Source: Adineta vaga
Lineage: Eukaryota; Animalia; Rotifera
Length of the DNA stretch: 64,000 nt
Direction of reading: 5' to 3'
NCBI GenBank assembly: GCA_021613535.1
Contig: CP075492.1
Span: 4,092,001 to 4,156,000 of the forward strand
How positions within the stretch are numbered: the stretch's first letter is position 1; the number at the start of each line of letters is the position of its first letter. Positions 1,177 through 64,000 of the stretch are shown here, piece after piece. The notes beneath the pieces were generated by a model. It saw nothing but the letters and a program-made list of their open reading frames with translations, was not told the origin of the DNA and ran no database searches. The translations under genes and the position numbers were made by a program.

Positions 1177-4100
1177 ATGAGTTTTTTTATCGATAATTGT
1201 TGTTTAAAACTGAATTATCTTGTTTGTGGTTCGAATGAATCTTCAACAGAAAAGAAGAAGAGAAAGTTCAAGTCTCGGGTAAGTCTCATCTTTTTTTGAC
1301 ACAAGGGAAATTTTGAACATATTGATTCATATACATAGGAGAAATATTCTGATCACCGATCATGACTAAATCACATGAGACCATTAGAAGATCTGCGTTT
1401 TTTCTTGACATGAACCATTGACTTGAGAGAAAACAGTTATTCAATAAGGAATATGATTTGATTGCAGAAGTGTTTCTTTCCTATATGGTTTCTTAATCAT
1501 GTCTATCGAGAAGCCTACTTTAAAAATTAGAAGAAAAGAAGAATTCTATTAGAAATTGACTTTGATCGAAAAGAAGAAAAAAAAGAAACGAATACTTGAT
1601 TATGGCATCAAGATAAAATCGCTTGGAGATAGTTAATTGAGCTTGAATAAAATAAGAATATGAACAATGGCTTAGGAAGCTCGTGTAAACATCTTCATGC
1701 ATATGCGTCCATATTTGCCTACGGACATGATATAGTGATGGTGGGATGCCATTAAGTACTCTATGTGTGAACGTGCGAGAGAGAAAGAACAATAATTATG
1801 TCATGTTCTCAGATGCAAGGCGGAATGCTGCTAATCGGTCATATATGTTCTACGCTTCGCTAGTTCTCACTGTTTTCTTATCATCGTTTTAACCAATAAT
1901 CTATTATAAAACTGATCATTATTTCAGGCTAAAATTTTTCATCAACATTGCCTATATTAATTCTATTAGTTGCCGTTCTTCTTCTTCTTTTCTTTTGTGT
2001 ATTTTTCGATGACAACTGAAAGTGACAAGGATAGTAACGAGAGAAAGATATGAAACGTTTGACACTAATTCTCATTTACCCTTTTGAAACTAATGCAATA
2101 AATGAAGTTCTTTTTCTCCAATTATTCGATCTGTCATCAACTAGTAGCCTTTATTAGAGAAAACAATGATTCTCTATGTTTGATGTCTACATCTGATCTT
2201 TATCATCCCGATCGTCCGTCATGTCGTGTTTCGTCTCCTTTCCTACTTTTTTTTTTATTATTGAGACATGTTTTTTCTAACAATTGATTGTGACATTTCG
2301 TACATCGTTTTTTTTATTCTTCTTTATAATAATTGTTTAGCGACAAGGTATTATGAACAATACTAGTTCAAATAACAAAGTCATTAATCGAACTGAACCC
2401 ACACCTATCACTTCATATCATCAACACTATGTCAATGTCACATCACCATATTACACGATACAACAACAGAACAGGTAAATGTGTGCGTATGGCTTTACCA
2501 AAAAAGATAAGAGGTCATGCAATGCATTTGTTCAATGGGACAAGTCACCTTGACAAATCTAAGAAAGAAGAAAGGAGCGACATTTTTCACTTGACAATGA
2601 CTTTGATAAATGGCAATTTTCTTTTTTTTTTATTATACTGATAGAGATCTATGAAGTTGTACATTTCATTTTGTTCTTTACTATTGAACGACCATTAAAC
2701 AAACGTAACGATACTGATGTCTAATGAACATGATTTTTTCGATATTATATACACATTGAAATCAAAGTCAATGTATATTACTTCAATCAAATAAAACATA
2801 AGGTCATTCAATTTTGGCCTCATGCTCTAACTTGAAGTTTCGCTCTCTTGCATCTGTTTTTTTATCCTTTTCCCGAAAAAAAAAGCAAATCAAAAGTGAT
2901 ATACTTATGATTCTTAACGAGATTTGACCTTTGAATAAAGATGAATATCAATGATTACGTCGTCAAGATGGATCAGATAAGACTATTCGCCTTAAACCAT
3001 TTTTCACCTTTTGATCTTTTCGACAAATTGAATTTGTTATAATAATGATAAAAATAAACTCATCGTTTTCTCTTTTAGTATTACAAAACCATTAAATTAT
3101 GAACAGATTCCTCTTCATTCAACACAACCAAGAAGATATTCTCATGAATCTTCATTGAATTCTTTTATTGATCATCGTTTATCTTATCGATCGTCTTCGA
3201 TATTAAGTAATGGAATAATAATAAAAGTAAGTTACATCTTTCTATTGATTGATTCGATTGATTAAATAACAAAAGAAAAGAAGACAAAGTCACGATATAG
3301 TTCGATAACTAATCAACGTCTTTTTATTTGTGATCTAATGAGAAAAAAGATCACCTGCTGAGTTTCATTATTTCTTGTTGCTTGTTTTCAATTATATTGA
3401 AAACTTATTCATTGTATTCGTTGACCTTGTCTATTAGTCAGGAGATCGGAAATCGATAGTCTTTTTCTATTCTTTCAAATAAAACGATTTTTTATGTTAA
3501 TATGTAAAACGACAAATCGATAATTTCTTATTTAGAATGTCATTCTTCGTCGAAATCATCCGAATGAAAGATTAGGATTGACTCTTTGCTATGGTATAAC
3601 ATCAAAATCCACAACTAATATTTATATTCAACAAGTAGAGATCATTTTTCAACTTTGCATTCTCTTTCTCATTTAATGATGAATAGGTTGATAAAGAGAG
3701 TATCGCCGGTCATCAGGGTGAACTTCGTAGTGGTGATCAGATTATTAAAATAAACAATCATCGTGTTACAAGTCGAGACGAAGCAATCAATCTCGTCAAT
3801 GGCGCTTGTCGTATTCTTTTACAAATAGTTCGATTCGAAGTAAATTATTCTTCTATATTCATTCAAGAATAGAATCTTTCTTTTCTCTTTGAAAAAATAA
3901 ACAAATTAGTTTTCAAAACCAAATTTCTTTACAATTCCATCCGAAATACCATTGACCGAAGATGATAGTGGTGTTATGCTTGCCTGTAATACAGATCTTG
4001 ATATGAACAATGATTGGATGTATCAAGTAATGATAGGATTTAGTCTTTGTTTGAATAAACATTTCTTATTCCTTTAGAAATCACTCTATGAATGTCAAAG

Positions 4101-10229: not shown

Positions 10230-11615
10230 AATTAGAACAGAAAGAAAGGAAAGGCAGAGTACGAATGATGCAACAGATTGGTCGTTTTCAATAAACCAAC
10301 AAGTGTGGTCAAATGAATCATCTAAAATATTACAATAGTATGTTCCTTTCGTTTCTTTCACAAGTAAATATTTCACGTTTTTCAAAAGAAATACACTTAT
10401 ATAAAGAGAAACTAAGCTGAAAAACAGGAACATCCAGCTAATTGGGATCAACAAGAAGTTGAAAATTCTACATTATCATCAACTACATTCAAATTAAGTG
10501 GATTAAATGTGAATACAGTGAAGTTTGTATCATCGTTTGGTCAGTTTCAAAAACTCCACGTTCGACACGAGTTGTATCTCAACACACAACAACGACAACC
10601 ACTACTGAAGATAAAAATCAACAGATAGTAACTAATGCAAGTGAAAGATACCTTCGAAATATTTGCAGCGATGATAGTGGAGAGTAAGTTACTTTCCATT
10701 GTCTAGATATGCATATGTTTATCATTACAAATATCCAGAAGTATTCGAAGATGGAACAAAAACCATGACAACAGCGAATAAAACTGGTACACCAAGTGTT
10801 TCAGCAGCTCCAAAAGAAAAGAAAAACATTGTTATTAAACAAGATATTATGCGAAAGAAAGAACCACTTAATATTATCTTTTGTGGTCATGTCGATGCTG
10901 GAAAATCAAAAATCGGTGGTCAACTTGTATCTTCGTATAAGTAAGTATATTCATTTATGATATTCTATTCAACATACATAAATCATTTTTGTTATTGTAC
11001 AGGACCAATATTTATTGAATATTTGGATGGTTTACCATCATTTAATCGAAGTATTCATGGTCCACTTCGCATGTCTATTATCGAAAGATATAAGGTATGC
11101 TTATTGATTCAACTTTTTGAAAAGATAAATGATCGATAATAAAAACTATGTTTGTTTTCATTAAAAAAAGGAAATGGGCGATTGAAATTAAAGAATGTTG
11201 AAGAAGAAGCTCGTATCCATTCTTATCAATACATTGAATTACTTTTGTAGAAAATCTCACCTGGATTTATCTTATGTGATGCTGCACAAAGAAATATCGA
11301 GAGAACGATAATTGTGAATGAACTCATATGAAGTAAAAGATAGTTATTTTGAAAATATTGATTGAGAAGAAGATTAGACTATTTTCTGATATATCATTCA
11401 TGAAAAGAAGTACTTGAGTATTGAATAATCATCATGGATAAACATACATGTTTTTTTTTGGTTGTTTCATGTAGGTTGCTATCATTGAACACAAATCAAT
11501 CATATGTCCTGTTCAATTTTAAAAATTAATCACATTAGTTGATCGAAAGACAGGTGATAGAACTCAAGAACATCCACGTTTCATCAAACAAGATCAAGCA
11601 ATTTGTATGGAAATG
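10230..11615 (+). pseudogene. Degenerate eRF3 copy, including its upstream region
   Basis: Remnants PANWDQQ, KEPLNIIFCGHVDAGKS, GPIFIEYLD and EHKSIICP. Start codon lost and several large deletions. Confidence 0.9.
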
Positions 11616-11809
11616 TTCTTTTATTTATTGTTATTTCATATTTATATTCTTTCTGAAGACAAAGAAAAAGAAATCTTATAATTGATAAGATTTTTGTTAT
11701 GCATCTGATTCTAAGAAGAACATCAAATAAAACAATATTCAAAAAAAACTAAACTCATTTTGTTTTCTTGTGTTTGTAGATTGTTTTTTTCCTCATCCTT
11801 TTCTCTCGA

Positions 11810-12898
11810 ATGTTATTTTCACGTTTATTAGTTCCACGAGTAAAACTGAATGTTGTTTGTCGGTTAAAGTCCATAGATAGAAACTTAGTTGTTGAATTAA
11901 ATCAAATCAAATCCAAAGATCTTTTGAAAATATTCAATGAACAACAAACAAAAGATTTTCTTCAATTGAGAAGGTCTCTAGGTGGTAAATTTCAATCATT
12001 GCAACAATTTCAAAATGAATCCAAGATACAAATTGACTGTAAAATAAATCATACGTTGTTTATTCTTTTTATCTTTCATATGATTTTAGTTGATAAATTT
12101 TGTGGTTATTTGTTAACGTTAAAAGATCGAAATGATAAGCAACAACATCGAATTCATATCGAACCTCGTCTAACATCACAACTTGCCGCCGTAAATGAGT
12201 TTTGTCCATGAAAGAACAAATCGAATTGGTTCTCTCTAGGATATTGAAAGTGTCTGTAGTGTCGATTATACATCATCGCATATCAATTGGGCAATTGTCA
12301 CTACAACAACACAAAATAATAATCATTTTCAAGTCAACCAATGGAATTCGTTAGAAATTGATATTTCTCGAAGATACAGTTTCATCAAAACATTCAATCA
12401 AGTTAGTTCTACATATTGTATTTGTTATCATTGTTTTAAATTGAAACGTTTTTCTTTTAGTTATCCGAAAGTCTTTCAACCGTTCCATTGAATGATGCCA
12501 ATGTTCTTCTCGTTGAACAAACAACATATCGTTATCCAAATATTAAATTAGCAACTTATGTCTCTCAAATACAACAAATTCGTGCTATACTCAATACCAT
12601 ACTTCATTGTCAATTGCTAACTAAACGTCCGATTTATCATATATCAGGAAGAGATGTAGCAACACGTTTTGGTTTATTTATTGGCAATGAACAGTCGAGT
12701 GCTGAGTTTTTTCTGACGAATCTGATATTTAATAATATCAATGACAAACAAATGATATCAATGGATATTGATCATCAACTGAAAACGAATTATCATGAAT
12801 CAACGAAAGGACAACGAGAACCAATGGCCCAATGTTTGTTGAGAGCATTAGCTTTTCTTCAATCTGTAAATCAGAAAAAAGCTGAATCTCCTAAGTAA
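11810..12898 (+). CDS. TEFM: Mitochondrial transcription elongation factor TEFM-like, intact copy B, 4 exons
   Basis: Basic presequence, HhH-like segment (RRSLGGKFQSLQQF), pseudo-RNase H fold with VATRFGLFIGNEQSS and REPMAQCLLRALAF. Confidence 0.75.
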
Positions 12899-36941: not shown

Positions 36942-37630
36942 CTAATAATGTGGATATTTGCGTGATAAAGAAGCATTGACTGGTTTCGCAGCTCGGACAT
37001 CATCGGTATCAGTTCCTTGTTGTTGTTGTTCTTCTGCTTCATTATCTGATGAAGTGGAGCTACTACTACTACTATCACTATTTGTGGACGATTTACCATC
37101 GTCATTATCATCGTCATCTAAATGAGTCAACATAGACAATAACAGCTTAAACATTTTTATACGTCTTACCACTTGTATCATCATCATCATCATCCGATGA
37201 GGAAGATGATGAAGATTGTTCATGTGCTAACATATAATCAATCAATGGTGCAAATTGTTGAGCTTCAGCATTATCCGGTTCATACATCAACATAAATTGA
37301 CATAATTTCTTCGCCACTTCCCATTTTCGAAACATAATTGAATTAATAAACTAAATCAAAAACAAACGTAAATGCATGAAATGATTTTTCTTTATTTCTT
37401 ACTTCCATTTTCAATTGCATTGGAGCACGGATCGGTTCATCATCATCACTTGATGAAGATTCTTCTATTTCTTCATCTAAATCTATTAATTTTCAACAAA
37501 TCAATCTCATTTGAATAAACATACTCTTTTTATGATGATTTCCATTCGTTGTCGCTACTGGTGTATCTTTCTTTGTCTTCCCATTACTTGTCTTGATTCG
37601 ATTAGCACTATTAGCCGTTGAACGGGACAT
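36942..37630 (-). CDS. ERICH2: Glutamate-rich protein 2-like, intact copy
   Basis: IRAPMQLKME|FINSIMFRKWEVAKKLCQFMLMYEPDNAEA followed by acidic/Ser-rich tracts. Confidence 0.7.
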
Positions 37631-37749
37631 TCTCTCTTCTTCTTATCTGAAAACAAACACAAAAATCTTCGATAACATTCTCTTATCAATGCTAATAATC
37701 AACAACTGGTTGTTCTTTTATTTCAGAAAAGAATAAATATATATTTTAT

Positions 37750-38060
37750 TCTACGTATTCAAAAGCACCAGGTGGTTTTCTTGTAACATTCTTTAGTTCG
37801 GAGTCGAATGGTAATATTGAAATAAATTATGATTTGTTATCTTCAACAATTTCTTTTCCTGATTGCGTTCGTTTTTCAATTTCACGTGATAAATCACTTG
37901 GATTAATCCATGAACGAGATTCCTTCTTCAACATTCAGAACTTGTGAGCAAATACGTTCATCTTGACGATACATGAACTTACTTGACCATATTAATCAAT
38001 TGTTTAAATTCTTGTTCCAATTGTGTATAAGGTGCTGGTGGATCTTTTTGTTTTCTTTCA
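37750..38060 (-). pseudogene. Degenerate MRPS26 copy
   Basis: Deleted remnants KDPPAPYT/EQEFKQLINMV, SRSWINPSDLSREIE and RKPPGA; homologous to 62400-63052. Confidence 0.85.
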
Positions 38061-38346
38061 GTGGACTCTAAACAAAAAGACGAAATGATTAAATGTACCT
38101 TTGAAAAGAAGAAGAAAAATCTTACGAGAACAAGATTTTCAGCACGACCTTTACCACGATAAATTGGTGGAACATAAGTATGTTGAAAATCAATTGTACT
38201 ACCATTGAGTTCATAGGTTAAATATGCTTCAAACATGAAGACTTCTATCGAAAAATCAAGATGAGAAAACAAATACTTTTATCAATCGATGCTTTATTCA
38301 ATTCAATTTTGAATTCGCTGTTAGTTTTATCATGAACATCATCCAT
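38061..38346 (-). pseudogene. Truncated NATD1-like copy, joined by deletion to the MRPS26 relic
   Basis: AYLTYELNGSTIDFQHTYVPPIYRGKGRAE is retained; exon 3 is lost. Confidence 0.8.
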
Positions 38347-39336
38347 CTTCGTGATGTGACTAGTTAGTTTTTTATTCCGATAAATAACCATGGAAAATAT
38401 ATCAATCCAATGAAGGAACTATAGAGGTCACTCTTAGCGATGAATATGTTTTATATCTAACCACACGTGTATTTTGAAATTATCCTTGATTGTTACAAAA
38501 CGTCTATCTGTCTTCCTTTATTTTTTGCTTAATCGGTTTCTTTCTTTTGGCGTGGGTGTAGATAATTAGCTAGTCTTAACTCCACCACCCCCACCCTCAA
38601 AATGGGTACTATACCTGAATAGGTCAAATAATTAAAACAGTTGAGATCAACTTTCATGTTTGATACCACTGATAGGATGACGATTCTCAACAATTAATGC
38701 AAGGTCATCCCAAAATTTTTTAAATTTATAGACAGTGGTACTATCGGATGGATTCGAATCTCGACTAAAATGAGCATCTCTTTTTTAGTCTATAGATTTA
38801 TTCGTTGGACCGTACAATAATTCGATTAATCGATCAAAATGAATACAAATGTGCTTGGTGACCATTTGATACCATAACTAATGTTGATTTTAATGAAGAA
38901 TCTTCATTAATATAGAGCCACTATTAAGTGATTCATGAAAGTATCACTTTAAAGTTACTATGAGATTGGATACAGTCTCGAGAAATTCTTTCTAGATGTT
39001 TCCAACGTTGTTTTATTTTCTGCAATACATTCATAAAACTTCATTAACTTTCAAAATATTCTGTCGGCCTGAATGTGCCGAGTTTATTCATTTTAGTCAT
39101 TTTGTTAATTTTAATCAAACCTTTAGGTATAGCATTATAATACTCACGAACCGAAAAGGCCTTTTGCGTTGTAGAAGGATAAAAGTGCTTCGACGATTGC
39201 ATTTTTGATGTGCTGTTGATATAAAAAAAACTGAGAGAACGAAAAAAAACGTGTACTACATGTAAGGTAGCGTCAAGAATAGAATAGTTATTATTACGAA
39301 AAAGTAAAAATTATTTTCACTTACGTAAAACAGTCG

Positions 39337-40488
39337 ATGTCCACGGTTGCGCGTTTAAAAAAATTGGTATTTCTCGTTGTGATTGCAGCCGTTGCTGTAC
39401 CATTACAATATGGATCAACAAATCATAAATATCTTATAATGCGATTGTTGCATTCAACATTAACACTAAAGAATTGTTTCGTGGTAGATCAAAATCGACA
39501 AACACTTAGTCCAGCTTATCGTGCTTTCGAAGAAATGCTAAAAATGAATCCAACACAATCCTTTGCCCATTCAACAGACCCATTGAGAACGATTCAAAAG
39601 GTACGTGCTGGTTTTTCATTTAGCAACATAATTCCTAAGCCATCTAGTTGTAATATTACGAAAGAAGCATTTGTGCATGATGGACATAATGTAGATGCAT
39701 ACTGGATTGATCATCGTCAAAAAGATGTACGAAAACAATCGGAGAAAATTATACTTTATTTTCATGGTGGTGGTTATATGTTAGGTGACGTCAATGGTAA
39801 GTTATCCTGCATTTGGAGAGCAATGAAATAATCTTATATTTAATAGTTTATAGTGGAGTAGAATGCCATTTGTCTCAACTATTCAATTTACCTATTCTTC
39901 ATCTAGAATATCGTCTTATTCCGGAACATCCCGCACCCTCTGCTGTTGAAGATGCTGTAGCGATCTATCGTGCTCTTCTCGCTCAGAATGTATCACCATC
40001 TCAAATCTTTATTATGGGCGATTCAGCTGGAGGTGGACTAGCTCTCTTAACAATTCAAGCGTTAATTAGTCATCAACTACCTGTTCCGCGTGGTATTATC
40101 ACTATTGCGCCATGGGCTGATCTTTCATTATCTGGTGAAAGTTACACTCGTAATCAACTTACAGATGTGATGCTAAGAACAGATAATACCAAATGGCAAA
40201 CTAAAGTAATTGTGGATACACATAGATCAAAACGTTTACCAACTGATCCGATTTTTAGTCCTCTTTTTGGTTCATTCAAAGGATTTCCACCAATGTATGT
40301 GAATGTTGGCACAGCTGACACACTAGAAGATGATGCAAGAGGAGTTGTCAAAAAGCACAAGAAGCAGGCGTTAGTGTTACATTCGAAGCAGGTTTACACC
40401 TGATGCATGTTTATCCAATATTCTTTTTATATTTTCCCGAAGCGCGTCATACACTCGATAACATTAATAAATGGATTCATTCGATCTA
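39337..40488 (+). CDS. HSL/GDXG-family alpha/beta hydrolase (esterase), possible HGT, with a 1-nt frameshift near 40352
   Basis: YFHGGGY and GDSAGG motifs; intron about 39797-39846. The C-terminal GLHLMHVYP...KWIHSI* lies in a shifted frame. Confidence 0.8.
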
Positions 40489-42068: not shown

Positions 42069-43021
42069 TGCTTTTCGATATTTTATCTGTTTACATTTTC
42101 CGACGGCTTACGTTTTCTTCTCGACGTTTATCTTTTCAAGTGGTATACGATATACTTTTCCCTTTCGATATTTAACACTAAATCCTTTCATTTTCAGGTG
42201 CTGCACATGAACTAGACAATATAAATGTATGATTTTGTTCAAGATTACAAATATATATATATATCATAATTTTTTTATAGCTTGTTTCTGGCAAAATTTT
42301 AAATGGATTCGAAGTATTTGAACTTCTCAGTAAAAGTATGTTCAATTGAAATTTTAAACAGTTGAAATAACGTTGTCTTTGCGCTTTTCAGGTATGTACG
42401 CTGGTGATCGGGTTGGTGGTACTCCACTTAATGATGTTATCATCTATACAAGTGGAGAGAAATAGGTTTTTTATGTTAATAAATAATAAAAACATTCATC
42501 TTTTGTTTTATCTGCTTTCTATCAGATGATATCAAAATTTCTCTCAAGATAAATTCATAGACTAGCTTTGAGGGTATAGGGGAAGAAACGATTTAAGGAA
42601 CATTCCACTGTGATTAATCAGAAATGCACCAGACGAAGTGATTCAGTGATGTGAATAATAGTATGAGGTTGATATGAGAAACGACAATTAAGTGTTATTG
42701 TGATATGTTGAAGTAGTAAAATGATGTTTTTGTTGAAAGTAATTATATTGAATATACAGCTGAAAAACGGATATATCTAGTTTTTATTTATCACAATGAT
42801 ATGCATGATCATCTTTTCTCTATATTTTACATCAAAATATTTAACAGTATCGGAACCATATTATCATTGTAGTTAATTCTATTGAAGAAGCCAAGATGAT
42901 TTGTCGTTGGCCTTTTAAAGTTTTAGGCAAAATTCATTGCAAAACAAACATAAATTTTTACTTTAAGACCGAAGTATGATATACATTTAGATAAAAAAAA
43001 AGAATTTTGGTCAAAAAATAG

Positions 43022-43094
43022 TGCCCCGGGTGAGGATCGAACTCACGACCTTCAGATTATGAGACTGACGCTCTACCGACTGAGCCACCGCGGC
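43022..43094 (-). tRNA. tRNA-Met(CAT), elongator type
   Basis: Exact reverse complement of 54893-54965; followed by a T-run terminator. Confidence 0.95.
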
Positions 43095-43306
43095 GGCGAT
43101 TTGTTATTGCATAATGTTCAACTCTGACAAGTTCGATTCCTTTGAATATTTTCAACTTTGTACATTGTCATCTACATCAAATCACATTCATTCGACTAAC
43201 AAAACAAAATAACATCGGTGATTCTATTACAGCATTTCTTTCCTATATATTATTTGAACATCACACAAGAAAATGTATACAAAAAAATAACTTTTCTTTA
43301 TAACAG

Positions 43307-45888
43307 TTAATACATATCATCTTCATCATCACCTTGATTATCTGCATCCACATTTTTGATCTTTTCTTGTCGTCGATAAAGATCAGCAACTTGTTCTGCA
43401 CTTGTTGCATCTTCAATTGATTTATCTTCTCGTTCACGAAGAAATCGAGGAAAACGAAGTGAAATACCTTTTCCTTCATCAACCTAGTTCATCCAAAAGA
43501 AAAATAAACAATATTTTTCCTTAAAATATCTTTATTTACTTACAAGACCAATAGCTGCATGATGGTTAGGTGATAAAGATAAATCAGCACATTTGACTTC
43601 CCACACTTTTGCAGCATCAAACCAAACATCCGGTATTAAAGATGAAGAATATCGATAATATGCAAGTGGTTTAGGAATAATATGTGGTTCCAATGATTTA
43701 CCCAATGATACAAGTAATTCGTCAGTAAAACCAGTACCCAACTATTCGAGAAAACAAAACATATTCATTTCATAATACTTCAATAAGAGAAGAAAAAAAA
43801 CTTACTTTACAAATACATTGATATTCTTCATTATCTTTATCGTAACATGCCAATAGATATCCACCATAAACACCAGTTCGTTTACCTGTGCCAGTATAAC
43901 CACCAATAACAACAAGATCGAGTGTGTCTCCAACACCATCAAGATAATCTTTTTTCAACTAAACAAAAAAAACAAAGCACTATTTTCTTTGAAAATAAAG
44001 TTCATCAATTACTTTGAGCCATTTATGTGATCGTTTAGCAATTTCATAAGTAGCATCATCATCTAATGTTTTAACCATCAAACCTTCACAACCATCTTTA
44101 ACTGATTGTTCCAAATACATATTGATTTCATCAATATTTGATGTTGTACGTGATTCAGCAAAAACAAGTTCACCAGGTATACAACGAAGTGATTCATGTA
44201 AAAGACGACGACGTTCACGAAATGGTTTTTCAACCAACGATTCACCATTTAAATACAAAAGATCAAATGCAAATATACACACTAAACAATATAATCTATA
44301 TTGAAAATTTACTGTTTTACAAAAAGAGAACAAACCTTGAAGTTTAATTTCTTTAATATCTGCATCCTAAGTTCGAACAATGTTTGTATAAATATCAATT
44401 TTAATTGGCAAAAAAAGAAAACATCATAAGCAACACATTCTCCATCTAATATTAATGATTTGACTTGCGGTTGAAATGCATTCGGTATTCGTTCAATAAC
44501 ATCAGGATATTTCGATGTATTATTTTCTGAATTTCTCGAATAAATATAAACTTTCTTATCTTCCGTTAAATGTATCTAAAAACAATATTTAGAACGAGGT
44601 TAACAATTGAATCAACATACTTGTGCACGTTCACCATCATATTTATATTCACAAGCAAATTCACTTTGTCCACAACGTTTTAATATTTCATCAATACCTT
44701 TCGATGGATGTGCTAACATGGGTTTCTTGAGATTGACAAGAAACAAGAAGACTTTTGATAATATCACCTTTACGTTGTTGACTCTGAAGAAAAAGTATTT
44801 ATTTTCTGAAAGATCGAATAAAATTTTTACTTTGTTGCCTGTTAATTGAGCAATTTCTTTTAATTTTTTATAAACATGTGACACCGTTAATGGTTTAGGT
44901 TTAAACATCGTACGTTGTGTTGAACGAGAGGCCTGCAAAGAATTCAACAATTTCAAGAGATTGTCTTTCTTTTATAGATTTACCTCAGCGACCAAACCTA
45001 AATCACCTTTTGATTTATAATCAGCTTTTACTTGTTCAGCCGTACGACCTGTACTATCAGCAATTGCTTTGATAATAATGGTTTCACCAATACCTAATTC
45101 AATGCCTTCGTATTCTGGTGCGACTTTATTAACACATAAATAAACACTATATACTAAATCATTAGGTGATAAACTTCGAACTGAACGAAAGAAATTTGAT
45201 AAAATACGAATAATTTCTAAACGAGCTGAAGTTTCTTCAATTAATAATAACGTCGCTGATAAAGCACCATATGTATGGAACACTGAAATACACAAATTAT
45301 TGTAACTATTTAGTATTTTTCTACAATTAAATTTTACTTTTCACCGAGTTTCCAACATGCATCATTGATTGGATCATAATTTGTTTTACCGGGATTATAT
45401 GATTGTGGATCAGCAACACTGAAAATAAAGATTTGCTTTGTGATTAATCTTCTTGAATGAAGATTAAATTACCTTTTCTGTTCAATGGAAACAATTGTTG
45501 TTGGTCCAATTTTCGGCACTATCGTTTGTTCTTCATCTTTTACTTCGACTTTTGTATCGATAATTTTCATTTGTTTAACAACTTTAGTCGGTGTTTCTCC
45601 AAGATTTTCTGTTGATGAACTACTTTCATCAAAACTTAATACACGTTTTCTAGCACGTTTTGTTGGAATAATTCGATCTTCTGAAACGGACGATGGAGAA
45701 ACAATTGGTTCTTTATTTTTAACAGTAATTGGAGACGCAATCGTTTCTTTTTTTTTTCGATGATATCACAGATGATTGATCCTTTTTTTGTAAAAACCGA
45801 CCTAAGAATATGTCATTAAATACTAGTTAAATAGAAACAATTTTTCATACGCAATCGATGATTGACTGATTTTCTTGGAATTATTCAT
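43307..45888 (-). pseudogene. Inverted degenerate DNA ligase I copy
   Basis: KYDGERAQ is retained, but there is a 5' frameshift, a deletion of about 275 bp near 44730 and a disrupted segment near 44400. Confidence 0.9.
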
Positions 45889-46504
45889 TTTTATCTTCTT
45901 TATACGTGAAGATAAATATCTCAAATGATGTTCATTATGATTATGAAATAAAATTTGAACAAAGCGAAAAGAGAAACAATGTTTCAAAGACATCGGAAAG
46001 TACATACACGAATATGAATGAATTATTGGTATATTATGAACAACCAATAACAAATATCGTTCGAATTTTTTTGAGAGGCACCATATGAGTGAAGAGAAGT
46101 ACAAAATCGTTATGTTCTAAAGCGTTTATGGTAATAAAATGGAATGATATGTTCAAATCAAGTGAAGAAGATATTATACTATCAAATTTTAATATCATAT
46201 TAAGTTCAAAAAGCAATGTCATGTATCATTGAATGATGCAAATCTTTCTTATAGTTGTATGTAATCAAGGAGATTTTTTTTCTCGTTTTATACTTCATCA
46301 ACCGTAGCTAAGTTTTTATTTACAAAGAAAAAACTCAAGTATGAACAGGAAAAACAATAATAACAATTAGATGATCTTCATGTAAAAGAAGAAAAACAAA
46401 ATGATCGTTCTATTATAATATAAGTTATGCTTTAAAACTGATAAATATATATATATATCCATTAAAGTTAAAAATCACCCTCAAAATTCAAATAAAAAGT
46501 TCAT

Positions 46505-51530: not shown

Positions 51531-51607
51531 TTCCTTTACATCGATTACTTTTGTACTTCTCTTCACTTGTATGTGGTGCCTCTCGAAAAACTCTATCAAT
51601 CTTCCCT

Positions 51608-51631
51608 ATTGGTTGTTTATAATACACCAAT
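51608..51631. promoter_or_regulatory. ATTGG-N14-CCAAT dyad upstream of LIG1
   Basis: About 140 nt upstream of the ATG; conserved in the inverted copy at 46025-46048. Confidence 0.55.
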
Positions 51632-51771
51632 GATTCTCTCTCATATTCATGTAATAATGTATGTACTTTCCGATGTCTTTGAAACATTGTTTCTCTTTTC
51701 GCTTTGTTCAAATTTTATTTCACAATGAACATCATTTGAGATATTTATCTTCATCTATAAAGAAGGTTAAA

Positions 51772-54680
51772 ATGAGTAATTCCAAGAAAATCAATCAACC
51801 ATCCATTGCGTATGAACAATTGTTTCTATTCAACTGATATTTAATCGACTTTTTTAGTTCGTTTTTTACAAAAAAAGGTCAACCACCTGTGATATCACCA
51901 AAGAAAGAAACGATTGCATCTCCAATCAGTGTTAAAAATAAAGAACCAATTGTTTCTCCATCATCCGATTCCGAAGATACGATTATTCCAACGAAACGCG
52001 CTAAAAAACGTGTATTAAGTTTTGATGAAAGTGATCACGATCAAAAAAGTAATTCATCAACAGAAAATATTAAAGAAACACCAACTAAAGTTGTTAAACA
52101 AATGAAAATTATCGATACAAAAGTCGAAGTAAAAGATGAAAAACAAACGATAGTGCCGAAAATTGAACCAACAACAACTGTTCCAGTTGACCAGAAAAGG
52201 TAATTTAATCGTCATTCAAGAAGATTAATCACAAAGCAAATCTTGAATTTCAGTGTTGCTGATCCACAATCATATAATCCCGGTAAAACAAATTATGATC
52301 CAATCAATGATGCATGTTGGAAACTCGGTGAAAAGTAAAGTTTTTTGCGAACAGTGATATAAATTTGCAAGCTTTTTTTTAGTGTTCCATACAGCGCTTT
52401 ATCAGCAACGTTATTATTAATTGAAGAAACTTCAGCTCGTTTAGAAATTATTCGTATTTTATCAAACTTTTTTCGTTCAGTTCGAAGTTTATCACCTAAT
52501 GATTTAGTATATAGTGTTTATTTATGTGTTAATAAAGTCGCACCAGAATACGAAGGCATTGAATTAGGTATTGGTGAAACCATTATTATCAAAGCAATTG
52601 CTGATAGTACGGGTCGTACGGCTGAACAAGTGAAAGCAGATTATAAATCGAAAGGTGATTTAGGATTGGTTGCTGAGGTAAATCTATAAAAGAAAAACAA
52701 TCTCTTGAAATTGTTGGATTCTTTGCAGGCATCTCGTTCAACACAACGCACGATGTTTAAACCTAAACCATTGACGGTATCACATGTTTATAAAAAATTA
52801 AAAGAAATAGCCCAATTAACAGGCAACAAAGTAAAAATTTTATTCGATCTTTCAGAAAATAAATACTTTTTCTTCAGAGTCAACAACGTAAAGGTGATAT
52901 TATCAAAAGTCTTCTTGTTTCTTGTCAATCTCATGAAACTCGTTATCTTGCTCGATCGTTAATCGGCAAACTTCGTATTGGTTTAGCTGAACAATCGATG
53001 CTTGTTGCTTTAGCGCATGCATGTATTCGTCATGATTCGTCAGATTTAAAAGAATCAGTATTAAAAGAACATCTTGATGCTGGTACACTTGCTGTTAAAG
53101 AAGCATTTTGTCAATGTCCATCCTATGATATTCTTATGGATGTTCTTATTAATAAAGGTGGAATCAATCATTTGAGAGAATTATGTAAAGCAACACCAGG
53201 TATACCAATGAAACCCATGTTAGCACATCCATCGAAAGGTATTGATGAAATATTAAAACGTTGTGGACAAAGCGAATTTGCTTGTGAATATAAATATGAC
53301 GGTGAACGTGCACAAGTATGTTAATTCAATTGTTAATCTCGTTCTAAATATCGTTTTTAGGTTCATTTAACGGAAGATAAGAAAGTTTATATTTATTCGA
53401 GAAATTCAGAAAATAATACATCGAAATATCCTGATGTTATTGAACGAATACCGAATGCATTTCAACCACAAGTCAAATCATTAATATTAGATGGAGAATG
53501 TGTTGCTTATGATATTGAACAAAAGAAATTATTACCTTTTCAAACATTATCAACTCGTAAACGAAAAGTATGTTGTCTGCTTCAAATCTATGATTCTTCA
53601 CGTAGTGATTTGATTTGATTTAGGATGCAGATATTAAAGAAATTAAAGTTCAAGGTATGTTTCTTCATTCTTTATTATTTCATTTGAATGAATAATTTTG
53701 TTTAGTTTGCATATTTGCATTTGATCTTTTGTATTTAAATGGTGAATCATTGGTTGAAAAACCATTTCGTGAACGTCGTCGCCTCTTACATGAATCACTT
53801 CGTTGTATACCTGGTGAACTTGTTTTTGCTGAATCACGTACAACCTCAAATATTGATGAAATCAATATGTATTTGGAACAATCAGTTAAAGATGGTTGTG
53901 AAGGTTTGATGGTTAAAACATTAGATGATGATGCTACTTATGAAATTGCTAAACGATCACATAAATGGCTCAAAGTAATTTATGAACTTTATTTTCAAAG
54001 AAAATAGTGCTTTGTTTTTTTTTGTTTAGTTGAAAAAAGATTATCTTGATGGTGTTGGAGATACACTTGATCTTGTCGTCATTGGTGGTTATACAGGTAC
54101 TGGTAAACGAACTGGTGTTTATGGTGGATATCTATTGGCATGTTACGATAAAGATAATGAAGAATATCAATGTATTTGTAAAGTAAGTTTTTCTCTTCTC
54201 TTATTGAAGTATTATGAAATGAATATTTTTTGTTTTCTCGAATAGTTGGGTACTGGTTTTACTGATGAATTACTTGTATCATTGGGTAAATCATTGGAAC
54301 CACATATTATTCCTAAACCACTTGCATATTATCGATATTCTTCATCTTTAATACCGGATGTTTGGTTTGATGCTGCAAAAGTGTGGGAAGTCAAATGTGC
54401 TGATTTATCTTTATCACCTAACCATCATGCAGCTATTGGTCTTGTAAGTAAATAAAGATATTTTAAGGAAAAATATTGTTTATTTTTCTTTTGGATGAAC
54501 TAGGTTGATGAAGGAAAAGGTATTTCACTTCGTTTTCCTCGATTTCTTCGTGAACGAGAAGATAAATCAATTGAAGATGCAACAAGTGCAGAACAAGTTG
54601 CTGATCTTTATCGACGACAAGAAAAGATCAAAAATGTGGATGCAGATAATCAAGGTGATGATGAAGATGATATGTATTAA
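51772..54680 (+). CDS. LIG1: DNA ligase I, intact, multi-exon
   Basis: PIP box QPSIASFF spanning intron 1; [25 protein letters not shown] and ISLRFPRF. Confidence 0.95.
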
Positions 54681-54892
54681 CTGTTATAAAGAAAAGTTAT
54701 TTTTTTGTATACATTTTCTTGTGTGATGTTCAAATAATATATAGGAAAGAAATGCTGTAATAGAATCACCGATGTTATTTTGTTTTGTTAGTCGAATGAA
54801 TGTGATTTGATGTAGATGACAATGTACAAAGTTGAAAATATTCAAAGGAATCGAACTTGTCAGAGTTGAACATTATGCAATAACAAATCGCC

Positions 54893-54965
54893 GCCGCGGT
54901 GGCTCAGTCGGTAGAGCGTCAGTCTCATAATCTGAAGGTCGTGAGTTCGATCCTCACCCGGGGCA
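54893..54965 (+). tRNA. tRNA-Met(CAT), elongator type
   Basis: Cloverleaf with anticodon arm TCAGT-CTCATAA-TCTGA and GTTCGA T-loop; one G4:G69 acceptor-stem mismatch; TTTTTT terminator at 54969. Confidence 0.95.
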
Positions 54966-55143
54966 CTATTTTTTGACCAAAATTCTTTGTATATATAAGT
55001 TTACATTCATTTCATACTTCTTTTTTTTGAATAGAAAGAAAACAAATGCTTACATTTTTCAGTGTAGAAAATGTTTTTTCCGAAATAAATCTTTCCTTCC
55101 GTTAGGTTAATGCCATCTAATATGAAGCAAGTAAAGCAGGGAT

Positions 55144-59019: not shown

Positions 59020-59300
59020 AAAATGAAGAAACAGAATCAATCGACCAAAAAATAAAACGAAACCAGACAGATAAACGTTTTGTACAGAATCAAGGATACT
59101 TTCGAAATATATAGATACATATAACTATATAATATTTTCATTTGCTTATAGTGTCCTCTATAATTTTCTCCTCTTTTATTTAACTAAATAAATCATTTAT
59201 TATTTTATTTTAGATGATTATATATACTCTTCGTCTAAAATGTTCGTCGAATTTGCATCGTCAACATTCAAAAAGATAAAAATAATAAAATTGGTATTAG
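59020..59300 (+). pseudogene. Third, collapsed relic of the NATD1-MRPS26 unit
   Basis: Upstream motifs AATCAAGGATA and AGTGTCCTCTATAATTT are followed directly by CTAAATAAATCATT...TTTTAGATG and a decayed MRPS26 start. Confidence 0.65.
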
Positions 59301-59862: not shown

Positions 59863-60959
59863 CAGAGGTGCAGAATCTTCCAAAAAATAAAAAAATTCCG
59901 CAAACTGTTTTATCTTCGTTGCTCACCGACCAACTTTATTTCACAAAAACTAGAAAGAAAAAACATGGCAACATTTTGTTCTGTTCGTTATTATTCATAC
60001 AACATAGGAATTCGTTCGACTTGGTCTTTTCTCAGACGGTTCAAAACAACCGAACCAGGCGAAACTAATTTGAATAGACGGTAATGGCCTGTTTTTTAAA
60101 GAAAATCCAGTTTTTATCTTTTAATTGAAAGAAATAGTTGTTGAGGGAGGATTTTATGAATGGATCTGCTAGATGAAGCGGTGGTGCATTCCAATGTAAC
60201 ATCACTTCTTCGTCTAAGGAGTCGTGATCCAGAACTCGATTGCTACGAATGTGTTGCTTCAGGATTGAAGCAGCACTCTCGCAAACAGCTTCACTTCTGA
60301 TTTTGACAACCATCAGAGAATAGAAATGTAGAAACTGTTCGATATTATTGGCCAGATCTTTGTTCGTGAAGAAAGATTTCATCACTTTTGTCGTTGCAAT
60401 TCTATCATCTTTTGTCCAAACATTCCAATTTCCCTTGTGTTTCAATTCTTTCAAACATCGTTTCTTCCATCCCAAATATTGATCATTCAGTAAAATATTG
60501 TCGATCTTGATATGTTTTGAATCGTTCTTCGTAAACTCAAGGAGAGTTTGGAACGATGACTGTCCATACTGAAGCACATCCTCTCTTTTGGCCAAAACGA
60601 CTTGTTGATACAGTGCTGCTACTTGAGTTTGGTTTTATTCAATGAGATTAACGACGCAGAAGAGAAGAAAGCTAGAAACGCATAAAGAGAACGAGAAACG
60701 AATAGTAACTAGAATAACGAAGTTATGTATGTGTACGTCCATCTTTAGATGGACGTAAAGGGAAGAAATGAAAGAATCAAATGTGTATAGTTTTAGCAAG
60801 ATGAAGAATAGACTACACAAGTAAAGCAACAAACTCAAAAGAATGATTTATATCATATATGTAATTATGAGAAGAACAAAATTTCCCCAGTATAACAACT
60901 TTTCAAAAAATTCCCCCCCCCCCGCGCGGGGGCGCACGAGGAAGATTCTGCATCTCTCG
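59863..60959 (-). mobile_element. Internally deleted hAT-like DNA transposon carrying a transposase C-terminal fragment (60065-60595)
   Basis: TIRs match at 17/19: CAGAGGTGCAGAATCTTCC and GGAAGATTCTGCATCTCTC. The ORF has a dimerisation-like motif IRSEAVCESAAS...LHWNAP. TSD degenerate. Confidence 0.7.
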
Positions 60960-61895
60960 AATACTCTTTCGTGTAATCATATACATTGTATTATGTGTTT
61001 ATCATTCATAAAGGATAAAACGTGGTGAGAACTGTATTACAAAAATAAGAATATAGTAGAATATCGTGAAGAATTTATTGGTATGAATTATCTAAAACGT
61101 ATTATACTATGTTTCAATCTGTAATGTTTGTTGTTATTTTTTCTTGTCGTAATTAATATTTTATTACTCTTTGTAATTATCGATAAAAATGATCCGATGA
61201 TATTTACCATGAACATGGACATTTGAAAATAGTATGCGCACAGTTGTTTGCTTTGTTATAATTAGACGATAGTTGATGCGACAATTCTTATTTATATTTA
61301 TCATCTAGATATGATCCATAAAATATTCATTTTATATGTATACCGTAAACTTATTGTATATAAACAAGTTTTTCTTTTTTTCGTTTTCTTGGTATAGTTC
61401 AAAAAATGCGTACATATCAACTCTGACGTATAATATAACTGCATTCGTATTCGTTCATAAGCAACAACCTTTCATTTGCATTTATTTTTATGAAGAACTA
61501 GTTATTTTCAGATTACACAACTAAATTAAATGAATAAACTTTATGCATTTCGATTCAGTTTGAAAACCATATTACTTTGTTCTTTTCAGTTATTTAATCG
61601 AACATAGAAGATGCCGAAGAAGAATTTTTTTCATTGATAGTAAAGTAAAATAAAAAAATCGATCAAGCGAAATATAAAATCAAACACATAGATGCCTTGT
61701 CAGCATCAAGGATAACTTCCAAATAGACGCGGATAGATATAAAATATTTTCATCGCTTCTAGTGCCCTCTATAATTTCTTCATCGGATTGATATTTTTTC
61801 CTCTCTTGGTTATTTATCTCAATAACAAAATCATACTTTACTTACTTCACCTACTCTCAAGTTTATTTTAGTCTAGGAACAGTAATTAATTATCC

Positions 61896-62297
61896 ATGGA
61901 TGTTATTCATGATGAAAAAAAACAGGAATTTAAAATTGATTTGGACAAATCATCATCCGACAAAGGTTGAACACGATTTTCTTCTCTACTTTTGAATAAA
62001 ATCATACTTTCTCAAAATTTTAGCATATTTAACCTATGAAATCAAAGGTGATACAATTGACTTTCAACACACTTATGTTCCACCGAATTATCGTGGCAAA
62101 GGCCTTGCTGAAAAACTCGTTCTAGTAAGATTATCTTCTTGCAAAATACATGTTCTATCATTCGATATTTTCTTGTTTAGAGTGCATTAGATTATGTTGA
62201 AAAAGAAAAATCTATTCAAAAGATCACACCATCATGTTCCTATGTTGCTAAATTTTTAACACATGTTCCACAATATGCTCGCTATTTGGCTAAATAA
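61896..62297 (+). CDS. Small GNAT acetyltransferase, NATD1/YjdJ-like; exons 61896-61965, 62024-62124, 62181-62297
   Basis: HTYVPPNYRGKGLA acetyl-CoA motif and PSCSYV. Confidence 0.85.
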
Positions 62298-62329
62298 ATC
62301 ATTCGTTTTCTTCCTTTACTTTATTTTAG

Positions 62330-63052
62330 ATGACTACTATTCGTTTGAAACTTCCATCGAATTTATATCGTCCATGGAAACCGTTATATCGTCAACGATC
62401 GAAAAAACAAAAAGATCCACCTGCACCTTATACACCATTAGAACAACAAATCTACGACCATGCAAAGATTAAATTTGATCAAAGAGTTAATATATTAAAA
62501 TCGATATTTGCAAAAGAAAGTCAATCATTATCAACGAAATCTCGATTTGCTCAACTGCAATTGAAAGCAGAAGAACAAGAATTTAAACAATTGATTAATA
62601 TGGTCAAGTAAGTTGTTTTCATTCTTAGAATAGTTATTAAGTTCATTTGGATTTTTTGTTCTAGTCAAGAGAATGAACGTTTACTTGCTATGCGTCGTGA
62701 AGATGAACGTGTTGCAGTTGAAGAAGAAGAACGAATTCGATCACAAGTTCTTAACATCTTATCTGAAAAACAATTTCGTGAACATTTAAATATCGAAGAC
62801 GAAGTGAAACAAATGAAAGCAGAATCTCGTTCATGGATTAATCCAAATGATCTATCACGAGAAATTGAACGAATGCTCAATGAAAAGCATGATTATAATT
62901 TTTCAATTGATTTAGCGGGTAAAAGACGAACACAAACAGGAAAAGAAATTCCTGATGATACCAAACCAAAACTAGTTTCTATCTCATCATTTGAATCGGA
63001 ACCAAAGATTGTTGCAAGAAAACCGCCTGGTGCTTCAAAATATGAAGAATAG
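62330..63052 (+). CDS. MRPS26: Mitochondrial ribosomal protein S26-like, 2 exons
   Basis: Basic N-terminus, long coiled coil, and SWINPNDLSREIERMLNEKHDYNFSIDLAG. Confidence 0.7.
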
Positions 63053-63141
63053 AATATGTTTTTCTTTTTCAAATAAAAAACAGTTACTGATTGTTACCGT
63101 TGTTAGGAGAATGTTAGCGAACATTTGTGTTTTTCTTTCAG

Positions 63142-63585
63142 ATAAGTATGAAAGAGAATTTCTCGTTCAACGTCTGGTTGTACTAATCAAATTAAAACAA
63201 GAAATGGAAAGAAAAAGAAAGATTCACCGATGAGAAAATCAAAGAATCGTCGTCAAGTGATGATGATGAACCAATTCGAACACCAGTGCAATTAAAAATC
63301 GAAGTACGATGTTTAAAGATACCGAATATTCGTTCTCATGAGTTTGTATTTTTTCTGTCTAGTTTCTTAATTCAATTATGGTTCGGCAATGGGAATTGGC
63401 AAAGAAGCTGTGTCAATTTATGTTAATGTTCAAGCACCGAAACCAGTCAATGCTTCTTTATCACGCAAATGTACACATCATTAGTGATAACATAAAAACA
63501 AATAATATTCTCGTCCATTTTAATATAATTTTGTTTGTTTTTCTAAACATATTTTTTTCAATTCAAAATAGATCTCAATCGAATA
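63142..63585 (+). pseudogene. Degenerate ERICH2 copy with 3' UTR
   Basis: PIRTPVQLKIE|FLNSIMVRQWELAKKLCQFM followed by a deletion to KPVNASLSRK; homologous to 36850-37646. Confidence 0.85.
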
Positions 63586-64000
63586 TTTTACACTCCATAA
63601 ACTATAGCTCACATTCTATTCCTATTTATATAACTACTTTGATAAGAAAAACCATAAAAATTCTGCTGGAAATTTATGAAAGAATACTGGATAAATATGT
63701 AACATTAAAACCTGCTTCTTCTGCTTTAAAAAGGTTGAGAAAGAAAGTTCATTCAACTTCTCCGAGTAACGAACAAAATCAAACTTTCTATAAATCTTCA
63801 ATTATAATGATGACATCTTATATTATAAAAAACATGGTTTTATTTATCTTTTTCATTAGATAGAGAAATGATGTCAAGTAAGTCTTTAGAGAGAGATCTA
63901 CGAGATGAAATAATATTAATAAATATAGATATGAAATTTCTTTCTAAACAAAAAGTGTGGCTACTTTCTCTTCTTCACAGTATACATATAAATTGATGAA

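What the first reader, a model, noticed from the sequence alone, without database searches (positions are those of the whole stretch)
61896..63160. Operon-like NATD1-MRPS26-ERICH2 cluster with a 32-nt gap that is only a splice acceptor
Seen: the NATD1 TAA (62295-62297) overlaps an AATAAA. It is followed by a pyrimidine tract ending in TTTTAG directly against the MRPS26 ATG at 62330, leaving no room for a promoter. After the MRPS26 stop come an AATAAA and an unpaired TTTCAG acceptor (63141). The intact ERICH2 in the other arm has the same acceptor (ending 37647) 16 nt before its ATG, and that ATG lies about 120 nt after the MRPS26-relic stop. Known: bdelloids perform spliced-leader trans-splicing, and C. 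elegans SL1-type operons have a coincident poly(A) site and trans-splice site. Inference: a polycistronic unit of unrelated genes resolved by trans-splicing. Alternative: the phase-0 donor at 62124 could cis-splice to 62330 and give a NATD1-MRPS26 fusion.
Basis: partly seen in the sequence, partly recalled or inferred. Interest (0 to 1): 0.85.

Follow-up and report, generated by a model that had tools for sequence, protein, structure and literature searches.

The report
Spliced-leader operon in a bdelloid rotifer
Three unrelated genes lie head to tail in the rotifer Adineta vaga, and RNA data show the spliced leader joined at the start of the second and third, so they are probably one operon, a layout I found no published report of in rotifers; a local duplication has since split the working genes between two copies.

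Summary
The genome is Adineta vaga. NATD1 and MRPS26, each the only intact copy found, are separated by 32 nt ending in a splice acceptor directly at the MRPS26 ATG. This layout (gap 21-38 nt) recurs in all 12 loci examined, from five named bdelloid species plus environmental contigs. RNA contigs show the rotifer spliced leader joined at 62330 (one study) and 63142 (three studies). No 62124-to-62330 cis joint appears, so the fusion alternative is unsupported. Upstream-gene contigs stop one base after the acceptors, suggesting no intercistronic spacer, as in Ciona and C. elegans SL1-type operons; no poly(A) letters were seen. ERICH2 in this copy is an expressed, trans-spliced pseudogene. The intact ERICH2 lies in an inverted duplicate that lost NATD1, MRPS26 and their acceptor but kept the upstream element. 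Co-transcription is inferred (about 0.8), not shown; an internal promoter is not excluded. The scan has reported similar operon candidates elsewhere in this genome (19 notes); I found no publication.

The parts
61764..61827 (+). Conserved upstream element, the candidate promoter of the unit
   Evidence: Aligns with A. ricciae, A. steineri and the inverted arm. NATD1 RNA contigs begin at 61820-61864 with no leader reported. Promoter function is inferred.
61896..62297 (+). NATD1-like GNAT gene, 3 exons, 95 aa; first cistron
   Evidence: Both introns are spliced in RNA contigs. Only intact copy found in the genome.
62293..62298 (+). AATAAA overlapping the NATD1 stop
   Evidence: Present 20-34 nt before the acceptor end in 11 of 12 loci; partly a by-product of a Lys codon plus TAA.
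62298..62329 (+). 32-nt NATD1 3' UTR that is also the pyrimidine tract and trans-splice acceptor of MRPS26
   Evidence: Leader joined here in run X15. NATD1 contigs end at 62330 in X5 and X15, and the X1 MRPS26 contig starts at 62328.
62330..63052 (+). MRPS26 (mitochondrial ribosomal protein mS26), 2 exons, 221 aa; second cistron
   Evidence: Identical to UJR07611.1. Only intact copy found.
63053..63141 (+). MRPS26 3' UTR with AATAAA (63072-63077), ending in the second trans-splice acceptor TTTCAG
   Evidence: Leader joined at 63142 in X1, X5 and X17. MRPS26 contigs run to 63122, 63126 and 63142.
63142..63484 (+). ERICH2 pseudogene: start codon lost, two deletions, still trans-spliced and cis-spliced
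   Evidence: Family assigned through the intact paralogue.
38370..38429 (-). Upstream element of the inverted duplicate
   Evidence: 58 of 60 nt identical to A. ricciae, against 60-69% for neighbouring introns.
37746..38346 (-). Relics of NATD1 and MRPS26; one deletion removes NATD1 exon 3, the gap with its acceptor and the MRPS26 start
37631..37745 (-). 115-nt spacer with the retained ERICH2 acceptor (AG ends at 37647)
   Evidence: Leader joining was not tested in this arm.
36942..37630 (-). Intact ERICH2-like gene, 4 exons, about 178 aa
   Evidence: Exon 3 hits vertebrate 'glutamate-rich protein 2' at E about 3e-7. A cross-laying contig shows expression (loose end at 63426).

Best explanation
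An ancestral bdelloid NATD1-MRPS26-ERICH2 transcription unit is transcribed from one promoter upstream of NATD1 and cut into separate mRNAs by the single 23-nt rotifer spliced leader. SHOWN: gene order and tiny gap conserved; leader joined at the MRPS26 ATG and at the ERICH2 acceptor; NATD1 introns cis-spliced normally; leader genes present in the genome. INFERRED: one promoter and co-transcription (about 0.8). INFERRED, weaker (about 0.5): there is no intercistronic spacer, so each upstream mRNA ends at the next acceptor AG. This could arise because trans-splicing itself frees that 3' end for debranching and polyadenylation, or because cleavage and trans-splicing compete for the same site. 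In A. vaga an inverted duplication, dating to about the split from A. ricciae, was followed by reciprocal loss: this copy kept NATD1 and MRPS26, and the other kept ERICH2 behind the old upstream element, with the relics as an outron of about 700 nt.
For: Leader loose ends at 62328 (X15) and 63140 (X1, X5, X17), exact matches to the leader's 3' end and absent from the window DNA. 59 leader-exon matches in the genome, those read followed by GT. Gap of 21-38 nt ending YAG at the start codon in 12 of 12 loci. Contig ends at 62330 (X5, X15) and 63142 (X17), the latter 64 nt past the AATAAA, and contigs crossing the 62329/62330 boundary in X5 and X17. No conservation footprint in the NATD1 introns (37-76% identity between species). 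The upstream element is kept at 58/60 in the arm where only ERICH2 survives.
Against: Only de Bruijn contigs were available, and a contig across two genes is not one molecule; X5 also holds low-depth DNA-like contigs. No cap or start-site data. No poly(A) letters were displayed. The leader at 62330 is directly seen in one study only. More than half of bdelloid transcripts carry the leader (PMC1925144), so it does not mark operons. A. steineri has a gap of about 1.04 kb before ERICH2. The arm's relics are still 80-90% intact in surviving segments, so conservation of its upstream element may partly reflect recent function or use by a neighbouring gene.
Confidence: 0.78

Rival explanations
1. Tightly packed but independent genes: MRPS26 (and ERICH2) have their own promoters inside the upstream gene, and the leader replaces a short outron, as for monocistronic trans-spliced genes or C. 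elegans hybrid operons.
For: Leader joining is common on ordinary bdelloid genes (PMC1925144). MRPS26 is probably essential and in X1 its contig depth is similar to that of NATD1 (depth cannot rank genes). An environmental contig, L033, starts in NATD1 exon 2, keeps intron 2 and lacks the MRPS26 intron. A. steineri has opened a 1-kb gap before ERICH2.
Against: No conserved footprint in the NATD1 introns or exon 3 silent sites (few sites, weak test). A 21-38 nt gap is kept in all lineages. Upstream contigs end at the acceptor. In the duplicate arm the upstream element survives while the NATD1 3' half is deleted.
Confidence: 0.17
2. Alternative cis-splicing from the phase-0 donor (62125) to 62330 makes a 278-aa NATD1-MRPS26 fusion, and this is why the acceptor is conserved.
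For: The fusion frame is open and the donor is phase 0 in five species.
Against: All four runs splice 62124 to 62181 and none shows 62124 to 62330; the leader is joined at 62330. The fusion would cut the GNAT domain and bury the MRPS26 N-terminus. It cannot explain the 63141 acceptor.
Confidence: 0.03
3. The cross-boundary signal and contig ends are assembly effects (DNA carry-over, coverage drop), and the genes merely abut.
For: The runs are only guessed to be RNA, and X5 has low-depth intergenic contigs.
Against: Introns are removed in all four runs. Leader junctions cannot come from DNA. Ends fall on the same AG+1 base at two boundaries in three studies.
Confidence: 0.02

Closest known systems
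Ciona intestinalis intercistron-less operons (Satou et al. 2006, PMC1488885; 1,128 operons predicted with a gap of at most 1 bp in PMC7986045)
   Same: One leader used for all genes; unrelated genes; first gene need not be trans-spliced; upstream 3' end apparently at the acceptor AG.
   Different: Most Ciona operons (16/18) lack AATAAA within 40 nt, whereas the NATD1 boundary has it 20-34 nt upstream in 11 of 12 loci. Dicistronic cDNA clones exist for Ciona; here there are only contigs.
C. elegans SL1-type operons (Williams, Xu and Blumenthal 1999; read only as cited in PMC1488885 and 10.1101/2021.09.24.461604)
   Same: Little or no intercistronic region, AATAAA in the upstream cistron, resolved by the general leader.
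   Different: A rare minority class beside SL2 operons. No second, operon-specific leader is known in rotifers, and I did not test for one.
Oikopleura and chaetognath operons (PMC1488885, PMC12460157)
   Same: Housekeeping genes with very short spacing and no operon-specific leader; chaetognaths are fellow gnathiferans.
   Different: Oikopleura has 23-30 nt intercistronic regions and no AATAAA. Chaetognath operons were defined by distance under 250 bp plus leader reads, with three leaders.
Bdelloid SL trans-splicing (Pouchkina-Stantcheva and Tunnacliffe 2005; not held, cited through PMC1925144, PMC3795323, PMC2481426)
   Same: Same 23-nt leader.
   Different: Operons are listed as 'not determined' for Rotifera in PMC2481426.

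Membership tests
SL-resolved eukaryotic operon | Co-oriented genes with very short spacing | tested here: met
   32 nt stop to ATG and 89 nt stop to acceptor; 21-38 nt in 12 loci.
SL-resolved eukaryotic operon | Downstream genes receive the spliced leader at an unpaired acceptor | tested here: met
   X15 at 62330; X1, X5 and X17 at 63142.
SL-resolved eukaryotic operon | Leader RNA genes in the genome | tested here: met
   59 matches; GT donor after the exon in the pair read.
SL-resolved eukaryotic operon | One precursor molecule spanning the cistrons | tested here: inconclusive
   One X17 contig runs 61864-63142 with all introns removed and an X5 contig crosses the boundary, but contigs are not molecules.
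SL-resolved eukaryotic operon | Single promoter, none in front of the downstream genes | not testable with these tools
   Indirect only: conserved upstream element and no intron footprint.
Ciona-type / SL1-type (intercistron-less) operon | Upstream poly(A) site coincides with the downstream acceptor | tested here: inconclusive
   Contigs end at AG+1 (62330 twice, 63142 once); poly(A) letters not displayed.
Ciona-type / SL1-type (intercistron-less) operon | Same leader as on monocistronic genes | tested here: met
   The visible 11-14 nt equal the published general rotifer leader; the 5' part of the leader was not visible.
C. elegans SL2-type operon | About 100-nt intercistronic region and a dedicated SL2 leader | tested here: not met
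   The whole gap is 32 nt including the 3' UTR, and the leader is the general one.
Cis-spliced NATD1-MRPS26 fusion gene | Joint from 62124 to 62330 in RNA | tested here: not met
   Absent from four runs, while 62124 to 62181 is present in all; rare variants are invisible in contigs.
ERICH2 (glutamate-rich protein 2) | Homology of the conserved core | tested here: met
   Exon 3 of the arm copy hits named vertebrate ERICH2 proteins at E 3e-7 to 5e-6; orthology not tested by a tree.

The most novel reading that the evidence does not exclude
[quoted passage not shown] This locus is a natural experiment: the acceptor of a dead ERICH2 copy is retained because it ends the MRPS26 mRNA, while the duplicate shows an operon splitting by reciprocal gene loss, with dead cistrons becoming the outron of the surviving gene.
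Probability: 0.4. Interest if true: 0.78.

Novelty: new member of a known kind. Interest (0 to 1): 0.62.

Why it matters
Operons are listed as undetermined for rotifers, and my searches found no report (subscription papers are mostly missing from the library). A conserved example with leader junctions extends SL-resolved operons to this phylum, next to its chaetognath relatives. Two open questions become testable here. [quoted passage not shown] The second is how operons break up, since the two arms show complementary losses from one three-gene unit. It also affects A. vaga annotation, because abutting genes and leader-capped pseudogene RNAs are easy to misread.

Tried and rejected
Cis-spliced fusion: frame open but not seen in RNA. 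Internal-promoter footprint in NATD1: none, but a weak test. Bacterial promoter scan: not applicable to an animal, ignored. Rfam on a leader locus: no family. ESM Atlas for ERICH2 exon 3: leads only, under 0.9. Dating tree: the two A. vaga copies and A. ricciae are unresolved (support 64/56, 522 columns; metagenome rows dropped because one segment was mis-picked), so the order of duplication and speciation is not settled. Searches were input slips and were corrected; one search failed on thread count and was rerun. Williams 1999 and Pouchkina-Stantcheva 2005 were not held.

Full report
Source. The window is contig C3 of a 100.8-Mb, six-contig genome. The MRPS26 model is identical to UJR07611.1 of Adineta vaga, so this is the bdelloid A. 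vaga.

Observation. NATD1 has three exons (61896-61965, 62024-62124, 62181-62297) giving 95 aa with Pfam PF14542. MRPS26 has two exons (62330-62607, 62665-63052) giving 221 aa with PF14943. The TAA overlaps AATAAA (62293-62298), and the 32 nt that follow are a pyrimidine tract ending TTTTAG at the ATG. Only 5 of 2894 ATGs in the window have such a context. After MRPS26 come AATAAA (63072) and TTTCAG (63136-63141), with no partner donor in use. Both genes are the only intact copies found in the genome; the other matches are relics in an inverted arm at 36.9-38.5 kb. Exon 3 of the third gene hits vertebrate glutamate-rich protein 2, so ERICH2-like is a fair name.

RNA. No raw reads were offered, only Logan contigs whose RNA status is guessed. 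I laid four runs from four studies on 60000-64000. All annotated introns are removed, so these are transcripts. The rotifer leader was taken from PMC3795323. In X15 the MRPS26 contig begins with 12 loose letters which, with the genomic AG at 62328-62329, equal the last 14 nt of the leader. In X1, X5 and X17, contigs at 63140 begin with 9-10 loose letters that likewise complete the leader's last 11-12 nt. None of these strings occurs in the window. The X1 MRPS26 contig starts exactly at 62328, as expected where leader and genomic paths meet. NATD1 contigs begin at 61820-61864 with no leader reported. The genome holds 59 matches to the leader exon, and the pair I read is followed by a GT donor. 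No 62124-to-62330 joint was found, while 62124-to-62181 is in all four runs, so the fusion alternative has no support; contigs can hide rare isoforms.

3' ends. NATD1 contigs end at 62330 in X5 and X15, and in X5 the next contig starts at 62301, the overlap expected at a fork after 62330. MRPS26 contigs run to 63122, 63126 and 63142, beyond the usual cleavage window after the AATAAA at 63072-63077; X17 stops at 63142 with one unmatched letter. Both 62330 and 63142 are an A directly after the acceptor AG, which is where a poly(A) tail added to a transcript ending in AG would leave the genome. This is inference from graph behaviour: no poly(A) letters were displayed. One X17 contig spans 61864-63142 with all three introns removed, but a contig is not a molecule.

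Conservation. The order NATD1-MRPS26-ERICH2 is kept in A. ricciae, A. steineri, Rotaria sordida and Rotaria sp. Silwood2, and in environmental contigs presumed to be bdelloid. In 12 of 12 loci the NATD1-MRPS26 gap is 21-38 nt and ends YAG directly at the start codon; one low-coverage metagenome contig reads CTG there. AATAAA lies 20-34 nt before the AG end in 11 of 12, but a Lys codon plus TAA largely creates it. The MRPS26-ERICH2 gap is 109-117 nt in A. ricciae and Rotaria and about 35 nt in one contig, but about 1.04 kb in A. steineri, where ERICH2 may have left the unit. NATD1 introns are 37-76% identical between species, with no sign of a conserved internal promoter (weak test). A conserved non-coding element lies about 70-130 nt upstream of NATD1.

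Duplication with reciprocal loss. In this copy ERICH2 has lost its ATG and carries an 82-nt frameshifting deletion and a second large deletion. RNA contigs of both allele types cross the first deletion without gaps, and the first AUG after the leader opens only 12 codons. It is still trans-spliced and cis-spliced. In the inverted arm ERICH2 is intact (about 178 aa) and expressed, while one deletion removes NATD1 exon 3, the gap with its acceptor and the MRPS26 start. That arm keeps the upstream element at 58/60 identity to A. ricciae, against 60-69% for introns. This fits one upstream promoter still driving ERICH2 across about 700 nt of relics, although recent loss or use by a neighbouring gene could also explain the conservation. 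A tree does not resolve whether the duplication preceded the split from A. ricciae. Leader joining at 37646 was not tested.

Mechanism. Most likely one promoter upstream of NATD1 makes a precursor that is resolved at two unpaired acceptors by the general leader (about 0.8). The branch point of each acceptor must lie within the upstream gene's 3' end. So either trans-splicing releases the upstream RNA, which is debranched and polyadenylated at the AG, or cleavage and trans-splicing are mutually exclusive fates of each precursor; PMC1488885 discusses both for Ciona. I put the spacer-less reading at about 0.5. The main rival is separate promoters inside the upstream genes with ordinary outron trans-splicing (0.17), since more than half of bdelloid transcripts carry the leader (PMC1925144).

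Comparison and novelty. It works like Ciona intercistron-less operons and C. elegans SL1-type operons, and it resembles the latter in having AATAAA at the first boundary. It is not SL2-like. Two defining features, a single precursor and a single promoter, are not shown. PMC2481426 lists operons as not determined for Rotifera, the A. vaga chromosome paper does not mention operons or trans-splicing, and four searches found no rotifer operon report. PMC12460157 names rotifers in one general sentence on trans-splicing and operons, without rotifer data in the passages read. The scan itself has 19 notes on such candidates in this genome; these are unchecked leads and not support. What this locus adds is a leader junction at both downstream genes, a tightly conserved boundary and the reciprocal-loss duplicate.

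Method note. Database searches were run exon by exon by reference; joined models were left out of searches and only translated in local scripts.

Noticed in passing
G000, e.g. L013:1349-1524 (C1:2551160-2551336); clusters on C2, C5, C6: 59 matches to the leader exon, many as head-to-head pairs about 130 nt apart; the pair read is followed by a GT donor. No Rfam family matches them.
   Followed up: partly
window 59026-59165: A third, partial copy of the NATD1 upstream region lies next to the start of the divergent calpain gene (the neighbour in other bdelloids). About 2.5 kb, including an unexplained 176-aa ORF at 60065-60595 (minus), now separates the two genes; the ancestral promoter may have been bidirectional and been duplicated.
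   Followed up: partly
L038:4820-4880 and L034, L035, L037: In environmental lineages a ubiquitin-domain gene follows ERICH2 on the same strand; in L038 it starts just behind a TTTCAG acceptor close to the end of ERICH2, so the ancestral unit may have had a fourth gene. L038 also has a second MRPS26-end/ERICH2 copy about 2.7 kb downstream.
   Followed up: no
L033 (Logan DRR438451): A 1006-nt contig runs from NATD1 exon 2 through MRPS26 to the next acceptor, keeping NATD1 intron 2 but lacking the MRPS26 intron: partly spliced precursor, outron or intron loss.
   Followed up: partly
L031:4724-5762 and L039:about 10970-12330: A. steineri has a 1.04-kb gap before ERICH2; one A. ricciae haplotype has an insertion of about 1.36 kb in ERICH2 intron 1.
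   Followed up: no
window 61193-61697: Low-depth X5 contigs show a haplotype lacking 207 nt and 56 nt upstream of NATD1.
   Followed up: no
window 42971-46106 and 51549-55020: A young inverted duplication (89-97% identity) nested between the two old arms.
   Followed up: no
L010:about 1000-2550 and 2890-4030: What looks like a decayed Hsp70-like sequence (read by eye, not tested) follows the ERICH2 pseudogene, and then an alpha/beta-hydrolase-like gene resembling the one at window 39337-40403.
   Followed up: no
window 60912-60935: A C-rich and G-rich short inverted repeat in AT-rich DNA, where contigs from elsewhere lay with long loose ends; probably a dispersed repeat.
   Followed up: no
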